64,000 bases of DNA, taken from positions 1 through 64,000 of IMG/VR virus record IMGVR_UViG_3300043446_004613; one strand, given 5' to 3'. A program made the translations under genes and the position numbers. The notes beneath the pieces were generated by a model. That model was not told the origin of the DNA, did not search any database, and saw nothing but the letters and a program-made list of their open reading frames with translations. Each line of letters starts with the position of its first letter. Within the stretch, counting starts at the first letter, position 1. Shown in pieces: positions 9,952 to 11,873 of this stretch.

Positions 9952-10353
9952 CTAAATGATCGGCGTGCTCGTGATCGTAAAATCAAGTTCCGGCCCCGCC
10001 ATGCGCTCCCAGATCACAACACCTTCAGTCCTGTCGACTTCGGTTATGGATACTCCCGGACTGACGTACACTGAATCGTGAATAATTGCAGCGTTCGATT
10101 GCCGCAACGCGGCTGAGAGCAAATTGTCAGCTTGAATTGCGTACATCCGCTGGAGGGCTTGGTCTGCTTCATAACTCCAAGTAGCCTTCAGCTTGCGCGG
10201 GGCAGGTTTAGGTGGAACGTACGTATCAAGCAAATCAGCCACGTATCCGGCGGACGGGTCATCCGACAAGCCGACAGCGTGCTCAGTCCACGTCTTACTC
10301 AAGCGGGCGTGCAGACGGCGCTGGCATGTAACGTGTTTCTTATGGCTATTCAC
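9952..10353 (-). CDS. Paralog A: shared N-domain plus gp23-like capsid fragment
   Basis: GLSDDPSAGYVADLLDTYVPP followed by RKLKATWSYEADQALQRMYAIQADNLLS. Confidence 0.6.
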   Translation of the reverse strand: MNSHKKHVTCQRRLHARLSKTWTEHAVGLSDDPSAGYVADLLDTYVPPKPAPRKLKATWSYEADQALQRMYAIQADNLLSAALRQSNAAIIHDSVYVSPGVSITEVDRTEGVVIWERMAGPELDFTITSTPII

Positions 10354-10573
10354 GGCGGCGGTTCTTAATTACGACAAACGTCTTGCATGCAGACTCATTT
10401 GGCAGAAAGCTGATCACTGCGTCAGGTGGGAAGCCGTCCATCAGTGAAAATGTGACCGGCGGCCTGAGATCATCCAGCAAGTCTAAAACGTAGCACTCAT
10501 CCGGGTTTTCCCGGACGCTGTCGTCCAAGTTGCGCCACTTGCGCTTAACGTCAGTACTGCGTTTCAGGTTCAT
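10346..10573 (-). CDS. Paralog B: shared N-domain
   Basis: SVRENPDECYVLDLLDDLRPP. Confidence 0.55.
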   Translation of the reverse strand: MNLKRSTDVKRKWRNLDDSVRENPDECYVLDLLDDLRPPVTFSLMDGFPPDAVISFLPNESACKTFVVIKNRRRE

Positions 10574-10883
10574 CAAGATCAACTTCTAGTATTGAGCGGT
10601 AACGGGCTGCGTGTTCCCGCAGTGCTTGCTCAGCTGTATCCAGTCCCGCATTAAAAACCTGCTGTCCCAGTTGCGTGCTGCTCATGCCGTACAGAAGGCC
10701 GAAATTCAGAATCTTGTTCAGCTGATGATACGCATCTTTCGGCGGCTTCAGCGTATCAAGCAGTTCGGCGACGTACGTTTCGTCCGGGTCGTCCTTGATG
10801 CCATAGCCAAAGCGCGTCCAGTGCTGGCGCATCCGAGCGCGGAACATAGTGCGCTTATCGCGTCTTTGTCTACGAGTTGACAT
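10551..10883 (-). CDS. Paralog C: shared N-domain plus PolA motif-B-like fragment
   Basis: GIKDDPDETYVAELLDTLKPP followed by KILNFGLLYGMSSTQL. Confidence 0.6.
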   Translation of the reverse strand: MSTRRQRRDKRTMFRARMRQHWTRFGYGIKDDPDETYVAELLDTLKPPKDAYHQLNKILNFGLLYGMSSTQLGQQVFNAGLDTAEQALREHAARYRSILEVDLDEPETQY

Positions 10884-10893
10884 ATTAAAAAGC

Positions 10894-10987
10894 GAGCCTG
10901 CCTAATGCGCACTGCTGACGCGGTTCTGCTTCGCAGGGCGTTTAGAGTCAGGAAACCGCAAAAATTGACTCTGCATCAGGCAGGCTC
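10894..10987 (-). ncRNA. Structured RNA element (15-bp closing stem, two inner hairpins, possible pseudoknot)
   Basis: 10894-10908 pairs with 10973-10987; 10944-10950 pairs with 10966-10972; the loop segment 10954-10959 is complementary to 10920-10925. Confidence 0.5.
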
Positions 10988-11065
10988 AGATTGATCAACG
11001 TTCTACTTCGCGCTCATAGTCGATTTCCGCCATGAGTTGCGCTAACAAGGTGTCAGTGTAGTTGC

Positions 11066-11227
11066 TCACAGCGGTTTGCGGCGAAGGAGTCCACGAACGG
11101 TTGCAGCGGCCTGCTTGCTGGGATTCGCGAGTGCGTAAAGCGAGTGCTTCAGCCGGGCCATCGGTTTGGGGCTTTTGTTGTGCGCTTTGAGCTTGAGATC
11201 GTTAGGATTGAATTCGGTGACTTTCAT
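11066..11227 (-). CDS. Small basic protein
   Basis: Start MKVTEF downstream of the promoter. Confidence 0.5.
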   Translation of the reverse strand: MKVTEFNPNDLKLKAHNKSPKPMARLKHSLYALANPSKQAAATVRGLLRRKPL

Positions 11228-11249
11228 GGTGTTTAGCTTTCGTAGACGT

Positions 11250-11277
11250 TGTATACAATTTTTCAAGTGCCGTCAAC
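11250..11277 (-). promoter_or_regulatory. Early sigma70-like promoter
   Basis: GTTGAC-N14-TGTATACA. Confidence 0.6.
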
Positions 11278-11285
11278 TTTATTCG

Positions 11286-11873
11286 TCAATTAGCTTCTGA
11301 AGATAGCTGAACAATCCGCTTCTTGAGCGTATCAAGGCGCGGATCAGTCGCGGTCATGCCCATCTCGCGGTTGATGAATTCGTAAAGCGCTGTGTTCTCG
11401 GCACGCATCCGATTCACCAGTTCCGGTACTTTGAGCATGATAGGTGAATCCATCAGTGAACCGTCATCGGCAGTACAGGCTTCGTCGCCAAACGGATAAG
11501 CAATCCGCTTCAATAGCCCGAAGTAGTAGTCGGAGTTGCGACCGTACTGCTGGGCTGTTTCTTCCCAGCGAGCCGATTTTTCTTCCAGCTGCCGGATCAG
11601 ATCGTCACGCTTATGGAAGCCGCACAGGTAAGCCACAGTCAGGTCAGGGTCTTCTTCACGGGTAACGTGCTCGTAGTCGGTCGCAAAGAGCTTGGCAACC
11701 TCGCGCCAAGCCACGACCTGTTTGAGCTTCTTCTCGTCCGATACAAAGTCTTTCCACGCTGGCAGTGGATCACCGTTGAAGGCTTTGCCGCCGACTGCTT
11801 CACAGTACTTCGTGTACATCTTCTCCGCCATCTCGTCGACTTGCCGGAGGTATTTGGTGTCGATGGCACTCAC
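11286..11873 (-). CDS. Hypothetical protein
   Basis: 195 aa; YC..VGG.AFNGDPLP.W motif. Confidence 0.65.
   Translation of the reverse strand: MSAIDTKYLRQVDEMAEKMYTKYCEAVGGKAFNGDPLPAWKDFVSDEKKLKQVVAWREVAKLFATDYEHVTREEDPDLTVAYLCGFHKRDDLIRQLEEKSARWEETAQQYGRNSDYYFGLLKRIAYPFGDEACTADDGSLMDSPIMLKVPELVNRMRAENTALYEFINREMGMTATDPRLDTLKKRIVQLSSEAN

What the first reader, a model, noticed from the sequence alone, without database searches (positions are those of the whole stretch)
10894..10987. Pseudoknot-capable structured RNA directly upstream of the decoy-like triplet
Seen on the minus strand: a 15-bp closing stem GAGCCUGCCUGAUGC/GCAUUAGGCAGGCUC whose only non-Watson-Crick pair is G-U on this strand, an inner stem AGAGUCA/UGACUCU whose loop GCGGUU is complementary to a downstream AACCGC, and a CUGC-GAA-GCAG hairpin. 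These are followed by GCUUUUU and the ATG 10 nt after the stem. This is more complex than a simple terminator. Inference: a cis-regulator/attenuator, processing site or small RNA.
Basis: partly seen in the sequence, partly recalled or inferred. Interest (0 to 1): 0.6.

Follow-up and report, generated by a model that had tools for sequence, protein, structure and literature searches.

The report
CyVA-1-type kissing-loop RNA in phage
The flagged stretch is a real, strongly conserved folded RNA of the little-studied CyVA-1 class (a three-way junction locked by pairing between two hairpin loops), here carried by a freshwater jumbo phage and ending in a terminator-like stem; what the class does is still unknown.

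Summary
On the minus strand, 10987-10894 folds into a 15-bp closing stem (P1), a 7-bp hairpin (P2) and a second 7-bp hairpin (P3). The P2 and P3 loops can pair over 6 bp, GCGGUU with AACCGC. This is not chance and not a plain terminator. Rfam matches only CyVA-1 (RF02965), at 30.3 bits, below the 41.4 cut-off. A covariance model built from 75 other members, without this phage, scores it 64 bits (E 3e-12) over its full length. Across 76 distinct members, P1, P2, P3 and the loop-loop helix all covary. In those I tested, bacterial members carry their own ECF-type or sigma-54-type promoters. The downstream gene is often convergent. So the class looks like a stand-alone or 3'-terminal small RNA, not a 5'-leader switch. 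In this phage, P1 plus UUUUU sits 10 nt before the next ATG. It therefore also works locally as a read-through barrier (an inference). Function is unknown and no RNA data exist. I also found a hairpin-swapped relative just after LAGLIDADG endonuclease genes in many viral contigs. Verdict: a new, divergent member of a known kind.

The parts
10973..10987 (-). P1, 5' strand (GAGCCUGCCUGAUGC). U10988 may add a 16th U-G pair with G10893.
   Evidence: Sequence; MFE fold. P1 covaries in the family: 7 of 7 modelled pairs show double changes and 80.8% of cells are paired.
10966..10972 (-). P2, 5' strand (AGAGUCA). It stacks directly on P1 with no junction nucleotides.
   Evidence: P2 covaries: 8 of 8 pairs show double changes.
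10951..10965 (-). Loop L2 (AUUUUUGCGGUUUCC). It matches the family consensus UUUUUGNNGUUUC. GCGGUU at 10959-10954 is the 5' half of the loop-loop helix.
   Evidence: The invariant columns T-T-T-T-G..G-T-T-T hold in all 34 aligned members.
10944..10950 (-). P2, 3' strand (UGACUCU).
10940..10943 (-). Junction J2/3 (AAAC).
   Evidence: alignment to model R2.
10933..10939 (-). P3, 5' strand (GCCCUGC), with one C-U mismatch.
   Evidence: P3 covaries: 9 of 9 pairs show double changes and 90.2% of cells are paired.
10916..10932 (-). Loop L3 (GAAGCAGAACCGCGUCA). It matches the family consensus GAAGNAGAACNNCGUCA. AACCGC at 10925-10920 is the 3' half of the loop-loop helix.
   Evidence: 14 of 17 letters identical to the Rfam consensus loop.
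10909..10915 (-). P3, 3' strand (GCAGUGC).
10894..10908 (-). P1, 3' strand (GCAUUAGGCAGGCUC).
10884..10893 (-). Tail GCUUUUUAAU: a U5 run 2 nt after P1. Together with P1 it is terminator-like. It is also the whole spacer before the next start codon.
   Evidence: A T-rich tail directly after the fully extended P1 occurs in 11 of 76 members.
10551..10883 (-). Downstream ORF (110 aa), first of three paralogous small ORFs. It is context, not part of the RNA.
11066..11266 (-). Upstream co-directional ORF (66 aa). Its stop lies 78 nt before P1. It is context and a possible source of the transcript that ends at P1.
   Evidence: no family match.

Best explanation
The element is a divergent member of the CyVA-1 RNA class. 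A closing helix P1 formed by the two ends encloses two neighbouring hairpins, P2 and P3. Their large, almost invariant loops pair with each other over 6 bp (GNNGUU with AACNNC), which locks the hairpins side by side. That much is shown. The rest is inferred. The RNA is read from the minus strand together with, or just behind, the upstream small genes. The 15-16-bp G+C-rich P1 followed by UUUUU forms the 3' end of that transcript. This releases a stable RNA of roughly 95-105 nt, or a 3'-terminal domain of the upstream mRNA. The product presents its invariant unpaired loop letters (UUUUU, UC, GAAG.AG, GUCA) to a partner acting in trans, most likely a protein. Because only 10 nt with no promoter or ribosome-binding motif separate P1 from the next ATG, the same stem must also limit read-through into the three downstream paralogous genes. 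In this reading, that limit is a consequence of the RNA's position and not its purpose.
For: Identity. CyVA-1 is the only Rfam match worth noting: 30.3 bits, E 4.8e-4 in 3 kb, 8e-6 per genome. The leave-one-out model R2 was built from 75 members without this phage or its twin contig. It scores 10979-10902 at 64.0 bits, E 2.8e-12, over model positions 1-80 of 80, and gives no other hit in 64 kb. Twelve of 15 tested members of the alignment set pass Rfam's own CyVA-1 cut-off, five viral ones among them. Structure. In 76 distinct members, 86.7% of cells are paired, against 56.9% in shuffles. The covariation score is 0.694, against 0.188 in shuffles (0 of 500 reach it) and at most 0.175 when partners are slid. 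The loop-loop helix is 98.2% paired, and its two variable pairs change together (CG, UA, UG, AU, GC). Among 119 viral pattern hits, 57 have a partner loop; 53 of these are perfectly complementary at NN and 3 more pair by G-U, over 9 NN types. G-U pairs and the better fold place the RNA on the minus strand. Small-RNA reading. An ECF-type GGAAC-N15-18-YGTT box ends 9-11 nt before P1 in 12 of 76 members (0.26 expected). A sigma-54-type TGGCAY-N5-TTGC box occurs in 5 of 76 (0.08 expected). A T-rich tail follows the extended P1 in 11 of 76, this phage included. The downstream gene is variable and mostly convergent. A metatranscriptome study reports CyVA-1 as an expressed sRNA in halite cyanobacteria (bioRxiv 10.1101/761684).
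Against: There are no RNA data for this phage: only two DNA runs from one freshwater sample hold it. No sigma-70-type promoter lies upstream, and the simple terminator scan does not call the element, because its 'loop' is a 64-nt structured insert. The U-run is short (5 U) and set off by 1-2 nt. Most family members lack a clear U-tail (65 of 76). The Rfam gathering score is not reached. No trans partner is known for any CyVA-1 RNA. The three genes downstream have no visible promoter of their own, so a regulated rather than a passive read-through is not excluded.
Confidence: 0.55

Rival explanations
1. It is a cis-acting attenuator or riboswitch-like switch for the downstream triplet. Folding of the kissing-loop domain, perhaps helped by a ligand or protein, would decide whether P1/U5 terminates or lets RNA polymerase into the three paralogous genes. 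It could also decide whether the start region 10 nt away is accessible.
For: P1/U5 lies 10 nt before the ATG, with no room for a promoter or Shine-Dalgarno motif. The architecture (P1 closing two hairpins with kissing loops) is that of the purine-riboswitch aptamer (my own knowledge). The loops are almost invariant, as in ligand pockets. In several phage loci an ORF starts 5-19 nt after the element.
Against: Across the family the downstream gene is not conserved and is convergent in about two thirds of loci. None of the window's neighbouring ORFs recurs beside another member. The junction strands, where such aptamers bind ligand, are short and variable, and J1/2 is absent here. Bacterial members have their own promoters directly before P1 and no expression platform.
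Confidence: 0.15
2. It is only an elaborate intrinsic terminator or 3'-end stabiliser. In this view the structured insert merely protects the upstream mRNA from 3' exonucleases and insulates transcription units, and there is no trans function.
For: A G+C-rich 15-16-bp stem plus a U-run. U-runs also follow the closing helix in other phage members and in the swapped relatives behind homing-endonuclease genes. The element is positioned at the 3' side of co-directional ORFs.
Against: A stabiliser does not need about 20 unpaired loop letters to stay invariant across Cyanobacteria, Acidobacteriota, Alphaproteobacteria, Planctomycetes and phages while every stem drifts. Own promoters immediately before P1 in bacteria would then produce a transcript consisting of nothing but the element. 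Most members lack a U-tail.
Confidence: 0.15
3. It is a self-cleaving ribozyme or a nuclease-processing signal that separates the upstream and downstream messages.
For: Small phage-borne three-way junctions with loop-loop contacts and rearranged helix order recall hammerhead and twister ribozymes (my own knowledge). A rearranged relative exists.
Against: No ribozyme family of Rfam matches. Twister-P5 at 11530-11567 has E = 1, lies elsewhere in the window and is noise. No conserved junction core exists. The rearrangement is a swap of hairpin order, not a circular permutation.
Confidence: 0.05
4. It is a self-assembling RNA. L2 of one molecule would pair with L3 of the next, as in phi29 packaging RNA, giving dimers or rings.
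For: There are two loops with a private, covarying 2-nt 'address' inside an otherwise invariant 6-bp helix. The closing helix plus three-way junction resembles pRNA (PMC4201828). Some viral members lie just upstream of terminase genes.
Against: P2 and P3 are adjacent, similar in length and joined by 2-4 nt, which favours pairing within one molecule. The class is common in cellular genomes with stress-type promoters. Here it is not near recognisable packaging genes.
Confidence: 0.04

Closest known systems
CyVA-1 RNA motif (Rfam RF02965; Weinberg et al. 2017, PMC5737381)
   Same: The order P1[P2, P3] is the same. So is the U-rich 13-15-nt L2 (UUUUUGNNGUUUC) and the 17-nt L3 (GAAGNAGAACNNCGUCA, 14 of 17 letters identical to the Rfam consensus). 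L2 and L3 are complementary, and the size is the same (about 78 nt core).
   Different: It scores 30.3 bits, below the 41.4 gathering score. P1 is 15-16 bp instead of about 6-7 and stacks on P2 without junction letters. The NN pair CG/CG occurs in no other locus fetched here apart from the near-identical twin contig L133 (GC at that pair is 1 of 34 and 3 of 76). The host is a 211-kb freshwater phage, not a bacterium. The function of the family itself is unknown.
Purine-riboswitch-type 'tuning fork' aptamers (three-way junction with L2-L3 kissing); from my own knowledge
   Same: P1 closes two parallel hairpins of similar length that are held together by loop-loop pairs.
   Different: There is no conserved junction pocket. 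The loops are much larger, with a full 6-bp helix. The element is not tied to a 5' leader or to a gene family. No Rfam riboswitch model matches.
Intrinsic (Rho-independent) terminators and terminator-sharing 3'-UTR small RNAs; from my own knowledge
   Same: A G+C-rich stem followed by a U-run at the end of a co-directional gene. The 3' end of the RNA would be made by its own closing helix.
   Different: The 'loop' is a 64-nt conserved, pseudoknotted domain. The U-run is short and absent in most relatives.
phi29-family packaging RNA (pRNA; PMC4201828)
   Same: It is phage-borne. The 5' and 3' ends pair into one helix at a three-way junction. Two loops have covarying complementarity.
   Different: In pRNA the loops pair between molecules and the RNA is part of the packaging motor. 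Here nothing shows multimerisation or a link to packaging, and there is no sequence similarity.

Membership tests
CyVA-1 RNA (RF02965) | Closing helix P1 formed by the 5' and 3' ends | tested here: met
   There is a 15-bp P1. It aligns to P1 of models R1 and R2. P1 covaries in the family.
CyVA-1 RNA (RF02965) | First hairpin with a U-rich loop, consensus UUUUUGNNGUUUC | tested here: met
   The loop is AUUUUUGCGGUUUCC at 10965-10951. All invariant columns are kept.
CyVA-1 RNA (RF02965) | Second hairpin with a 17-nt loop, GAAGNAGAACNNCGUCA | tested here: met
   The loop is GAAGCAGAACCGCGUCA at 10932-10916, an exact match to the pattern.
CyVA-1 RNA (RF02965) | Loop-loop (pseudoknot) complementarity GNNGUU / AACNNC | tested here: met
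   GCGGUU pairs with AACCGC over 6 Watson-Crick pairs, and the changes at NN are compensatory relative to the other members. I could not check whether Rfam's own annotation lists this pseudoknot.
CyVA-1 RNA (RF02965) | Score at or above Rfam's gathering threshold (41.4 bits) | tested here: not met
   The score is 30.3 bits. However, a leave-one-out model of 75 members gives 64.0 bits, E 2.8e-12, and 12 of 15 tested members of that set pass the Rfam threshold.
CyVA-1 RNA (RF02965) | Expressed as a discrete small RNA | not testable with these tools
   Only DNA runs hold this sequence. Expression of cyanobacterial CyVA-1 is reported in 10.1101/761684.
Intrinsic terminator | G+C-rich stem directly followed by a U-run | tested here: met
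   A 15-16-bp stem is followed by (G)C and then UUUUU.
Intrinsic terminator | A simple hairpin with a short loop | tested here: not met
   The stem encloses 64 nt with two hairpins. The consensus scan does not report it.
Riboswitch / 5'-leader cis-regulator | Recurrent position upstream of one gene family in the same orientation | tested here: not met
   The downstream gene is co-directional in 11 loci and convergent in 21 (crude ORF calling). The window's neighbours are absent from all other loci.
Self-cleaving ribozymes (hammerhead, twister, pistol, hatchet, HDV-like) | Match to a family model or a conserved catalytic core | tested here: not met
   No match lies at the element. Cleavage itself is not testable here.

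The most novel reading that the evidence does not exclude
The L2-L3 kissing-loop module would be a widely shared, mobile RNA device that phages copy from, or share with, their hosts. In bacteria it is a stress-regulated small RNA (ECF-type or sigma-54-type promoters). Phages of several kinds, this jumbo phage included, would carry their own version to occupy or mimic the same still unknown cellular partner. A hairpin-swapped version would have become the fixed 3' end of free-standing LAGLIDADG homing-endonuclease genes. The covarying 2-nt 'address' in the loop-loop helix would keep each copy from pairing with foreign copies.
Probability: 0.2. Interest if true: 0.75.

Novelty: new member of a known kind. 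Interest (0 to 1): 0.5.

Why it matters
CyVA-1 is one of many orphan structured RNAs: it has been known only as a computer-predicted motif, with no function. This case shows three things. The class reaches into large freshwater phages. Its loop-loop pseudoknot is among the best-supported features of the fold. In the loci examined, bacterial copies sit behind stress-type promoters, while many viral relatives sit at the 3' end of homing-endonuclease genes. Together these give concrete handles for finding its partner: which sigma factor to induce, which loop letters to mutate, and which phage loci to delete. For annotating this phage, it means the 182-nt gap holds an RNA gene or terminator module and not an unannotated protein or a promoter.

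Tried and rejected
- Deposited phages: blastn of 1 kb around the element found nothing.
- Rfam at gathering thresholds over the whole window found nothing.
- tRNA/tmRNA scan found nothing.
- The sigma-70 promoter and simple terminator scan gave nothing at the element.
- Orthologous loci in related phages: only one near-identical contig exists (L133/L185/L186), so no orthologous covariation was available.
- A metagenome scan for the window's own NN=CG version gave 0 hits.
- RNA expression: no RNA run holds the sequence.
- Further copies in the 211-kb genome: none, by the Rfam model or by the loop pattern with 2 mismatches.
- A repeated promoter-like motif upstream was not found. The 9-mer excess seen did not resolve into a repeat.
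- A homing-endonuclease link for window-type members: there was no LAGLIDADG hit. There was only a weak HNH hit upstream and a clear HNH gene downstream in L128.
- Cyanobacterial and acidobacterial neighbour ORFs mostly have no Pfam match. The acidobacterial ORFs are probably spurious high-GC frames.
- The 110-aa ORF as a recent copy of the phage's own DNA polymerase: rejected, no similarity by tblastn.
- A literature search for the loop sequences gave no paper.

Full report
THE OBSERVATION

- P1 is a 15-bp closing stem, 10987-10973 paired with 10908-10894, with a single G-U pair.
- P2 is a 7-bp stem, 10972-10966 paired with 10950-10944.
- The P2 loop (L2) is AUUUUUGCGGUUUCC.
- The stretch AACCGC at 10925-10920 is complementary to GCGGUU in that loop.
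- After P1 come GC, UUUUU and AAU, and the ATG of the next ORF lies at 10883.

The 121-nt stretch folds at -48.2 kcal/mol, with z -4.5, and none of 200 shuffles folds as well. The opposite strand is weaker: -45.2 kcal/mol, z -3.7.

One detail needs correction. The small CUGC-GAA-GCAG hairpin is possible but is not the conserved pairing. In all relatives the CUGC segment belongs to a 7-9-bp stem, P3. Here P3 is 10939-10933 paired with 10915-10909, with one C-U mismatch. It closes the entire 17-nt loop GAAGCAGAACCGCGUCA (L3). P3 is also the more stable alternative in this sequence: -42.3 against -38.9 kcal/mol for the whole structure.

WHAT IT IS

A permissive Rfam scan of 3 kb gives one meaningful match. 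CyVA-1 (RF02965) covers 10974-10900 on the minus strand at 30.3 bits and E 4.8e-4. This is below the curators' 41.4-bit cut-off, so nothing is reported at gathering thresholds.

The match is carried by the two loops. L3 is identical to the family consensus at 14 of 17 letters, and L2 keeps UUUU.C.GUUU.

CyVA-1 is a motif predicted by comparative genomics. It averages 78 nt (PMC5737381) and Rfam lists it as an sRNA gene. One metatranscriptome study lists it as an expressed sRNA in halite cyanobacteria (10.1101/761684). I found no paper on its function.

The window is the first 64 kb of a 211,113-bp viral record that is 93% complete. The record is held only by DNA runs of one freshwater metagenome. 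The element is unique in that genome.

RELATIVES AND MEMBERSHIP

I scanned public collections for the two loops in the same order (TTTTNNNGTT, 10-40 nt, GAAGNAGAACNNCGTCA). The scans returned:

- members in viral contigs;
- members in genomes of Cyanobacteria, Acidobacteriota, Alphaproteobacteria and Planctomycetes;
- many members in soil and water metagenomes.

Twelve of 15 such loci that I tested pass Rfam's own CyVA-1 threshold at 44-68 bits. Five of these are viral. The set is therefore the genuine family.

I built a covariance model (R1) from 34 of them and realigned 76 distinct members.

To avoid circularity I then built a second model, R2, from 75 members. It excludes this phage and its near-identical twin contig L133. 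R2 finds exactly one match in the 64-kb window: 10979-10902 on the minus strand, 64.0 bits, E 2.8e-12, covering all 80 model positions.

The element is thus a full-length but peripheral member. Its low Rfam score reflects three things: an unusually long P1 that stacks on P2 with no junction letters, a mismatch in P3, and loop variants typical of the non-cyanobacterial members.

THE FOLD IS SUPPORTED BY COVARIATION, PSEUDOKNOT INCLUDED

These counts come from the 76-member alignment.

| Helix | Cells paired | Pairs with changes on both sides |
|---|---|---|
| P1 | 80.8% | 7 of 7 |
| P2 | 78.9% | 8 of 8 |
| P3 | 90.2% | 9 of 9 |
| Loop-loop helix | 98.2% | 2 variable pairs (see below) |

- The overall covariation score is 0.694, against 0.188 in shuffles; 0 of 500 shuffles reach it.
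- When the 3' partners are slid by 1-3 columns the score is at most 0.175.
- In the loop-loop helix three pairs are fully invariant (G-C, U-A, U-A). A fourth, the outer G-C, holds in 75 of 76 members.
- The two middle pairs change together. One shows CG 54, UG 8, UA 7 and AU 2. The other shows CG 31, UA 29, UG 11 and GC 3.
- The alignment was fitted to the model, so these counts lean towards the structure. However, an independent MAFFT alignment gives the same picture.

An independent viral data set agrees. I took 119 hits to the L3 pattern alone.

- 57 have a TTTNGNNGTT partner within 150 nt.
- 53 of those 57 are perfectly complementary at NN.
- 3 more pair through G-U.
- Nine different NN dinucleotides occur.

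The frequent G-U pairs fix the transcribed strand. The window's NN (CG in both loops) is seen in no other locus fetched here except the twin contig. A metagenome scan for exactly this version found nothing.

HOW IT PROBABLY WORKS

Three lines of evidence place the family among stand-alone or 3'-terminal small RNAs rather than 5'-leader switches.

First, bacterial members have specialised promoters at a fixed distance.

- GGAAC-N15-18-YGTT, the ECF/EcfG type (naming it so rests on my own knowledge), ends 9-11 nt before P1 in 12 of 76 members. Only 0.26 are expected by chance.
- TGGCAY-N5-TTGC, the sigma-54 type, lies 31-38 nt upstream in 5 of 76 members, against 0.08 expected.
- In those sigma-54 cases P1 is extended outward.
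- Such a transcript would consist of little more than the element.

Second, the gene downstream is not conserved. By a crude ORF call it is convergent in 21 loci and co-directional in 11. None of the window's neighbouring ORFs recurs beside any other member.

Third, the closing helix is followed by a T-rich tail in 11 of 76 members, this phage among them. Here P1 can extend to 16 pairs.

From this I infer the following for the phage. The P1/U5 structure forms the 3' end of a transcript coming from the co-directional upstream genes or from an unrecognised phage promoter; no sigma-70-type site is present. The product is a compact RNA of roughly 100 nt. Its roughly 20 invariant unpaired loop letters are the recognition surface for an unknown partner.

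Only 10 nt without a ribosome-binding motif separate P1 from the ATG of the first of three paralogous small ORFs. The element must therefore also throttle read-through into them. I cannot tell whether that throttle is regulated. This is the main rival, the attenuator or switch.

A plain terminator is unlikely, because the unpaired letters are conserved across phyla while all stems drift. A ribozyme or a pRNA-like self-assembling RNA remains an untested minor possibility.

CONTEXT IN THE PHAGE

All genes from about 4 to 15 kb lie on the minus strand.

- The flanking ORFs have no Pfam or PHROG match. These are 195 aa and 66 aa upstream, and 110, 78 and 133 aa downstream.
- The one exception is a weak DNA_pol_A hit (E 1.7e-4) to the motif-B region in the 110-aa ORF.
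- The phage has a complete family-A polymerase elsewhere, at 94165-95181.
- The fragment is not a recent copy of that polymerase.
- The three downstream ORFs share an N-terminal segment of about 30-50 residues.

These points belong to the 'decoy-like triplet' finding. They do not bear on the identity of the RNA.

A RELATED, REARRANGED RNA FOUND ON THE WAY

Most viral hits to the L3 pattern carry the two hairpins in the opposite order, L3 hairpin first.

- An alignment of 31 such elements folds into a larger RNA of about 120-140 nt.
- The L3 hairpin comes first. A new closing helix follows, CCAGG/CCUGG covarying with GGGG/CCCC.
- That helix encloses the L2 hairpin, a conserved junction (UGGNAANUGAUC) and a fourth hairpin.
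- Twenty of 26 predicted pairs show compensatory changes.
- A T-run often follows the closing helix.
- No Rfam family matches it. Only the L3 hairpin gives 17 bits to CyVA-1.

In 22 of 47 non-redundant loci a member of one conserved ORF family lies upstream, and where the ORF frame is intact its stop lies only 2-23 nt before the element. One member of that family, from L012, was scanned and matches LAGLIDADG_2 at E 7.8e-9. In L012 the second half of that gene continues in another reading frame up to the stop codon just before the RNA. These genes lie between a divergent major-head gene and tail-fibre genes of podophage-like contigs. The endonuclease looks free-standing, because there is no room for an upstream exon.

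Window-type viral members lie in other places. One group is just upstream of a terminase gene next to an HNH endonuclease. Another is beside a metallophosphoesterase.

The shared unit is therefore the loop-loop complex, reused in two architectures.

NOVELTY AND VERDICT

The element is real and is far more than a terminator hairpin. It belongs to a known but functionally orphan class, so I rate it a new member of a known kind.

What is new here:

- the class occurs in a jumbo phage;
- the loop-loop helix has strong covariation support;
- the promoter evidence indicates that bacterial copies are regulated small-RNA genes;
- a hairpin-swapped relative is attached to homing-endonuclease genes.

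None of this reveals the molecular function, and no expression data exist for this phage.

My confidence that it is a CyVA-1-class RNA with this fold is about 0.9. My confidence in the mechanism given above, a terminator-capped trans-acting RNA with incidental attenuation, is about 0.55.

Noticed in passing
L012:7922-8043 (-) and about 45 further viral loci (e.g. L016:1107-1228, L033:344-465, L025:4814-4935): A hairpin-swapped relative of CyVA-1. The L3 hairpin comes first. A closing helix then encloses the L2 hairpin, a conserved junction UGGNAANUGAUC and a fourth hairpin. Twenty of 26 pairs are compensatory. No Rfam family matches it.
   Followed up: partly
L012:8522-9229 (-) and homologous ORFs in 22 of 47 swapped-type loci: A LAGLIDADG homing-endonuclease gene family lies upstream of the swapped RNA, and where the ORF frame is intact its stop is 2-23 nt before the RNA. 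In L012 the second endonuclease domain continues in another reading frame (a frameshift or two ORFs). The gene looks free-standing, between a divergent major-head gene and tail-fibre genes.
   Followed up: partly
55 nt upstream of P1 in L152, L154, L162, L165, L171, L174, L182, L196, L211, L240, L248, L270: A GGAAC-N15-18-YGTT box (ECF/EcfG-type promoter) ends 9-11 nt before the CyVA-1 closing helix in 12 of 76 members. These are mainly alphaproteobacterial, plus one acidobacterial MAG and several unassigned metagenome contigs. This suggests control by an alternative sigma factor of the stress-response type.
   Followed up: partly
Upstream of P1 in L141, L145, L163, L229, L262: A TGGCAY-N5-TTGC box (sigma-54-type promoter) lies 31-38 nt before the modelled P1 in five loci (three from acidobacterial genomes, two unassigned metagenome contigs). 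Their P1 is extended, and in some a T-run follows.
   Followed up: partly
L144:670-1020, L153:1354-1698, and homologues in L149 and L150: A pterin-4a-carbinolamine dehydratase gene lies convergent to CyVA-1, 38-275 nt away, in three cyanobacterial loci and in one acidobacterial locus. This could be a cross-phylum neighbourhood or a coincidence.
   Followed up: no
L137:302-1024, L144:1500-2189, L149:4708-5430, L156:1759-2526, L159:2431-3180: A conserved ORF of about 230-255 aa without any Pfam match lies 94-138 nt upstream of CyVA-1, in the same orientation, in seven cyanobacterial loci.
   Followed up: partly
window 10551-10883 (-), 10346-10582 (-), 9952-10353 (-): The three small ORFs after the RNA are paralogous over an N-terminal segment of about 30-50 residues. 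The first also carries a DNA-polymerase-A motif-B-like stretch (NFGLLYGMS; Pfam E 1.7e-4). That stretch is not a recent copy of the phage's own polymerase at G000:C1:94165-95181.
   Followed up: partly
L126:2998-4461 (-), L128:3803-4294 (+): In two viral contigs a bona fide CyVA-1 lies just upstream of the terminase large-subunit gene. In L128 a convergent HNH endonuclease gene overlaps its 3' end by 9 nt.
   Followed up: no
L111:2809-2871 (+), L114:7055-7165 (-), L007:218-299 (-): Glutamine riboswitch aptamers occur in two of the viral contigs that carry the swapped RNA. In L007 a tRNA gene lies about 90 nt downstream of the swapped RNA.
   Followed up: no
window 10995-11033 (-): A 12-codon mini-ORF (MAEIDYEREVER) ends 5 nt before P1, 4 nt if the optional U10988-G10893 pair forms. 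There is no evidence that it is translated.
   Followed up: no
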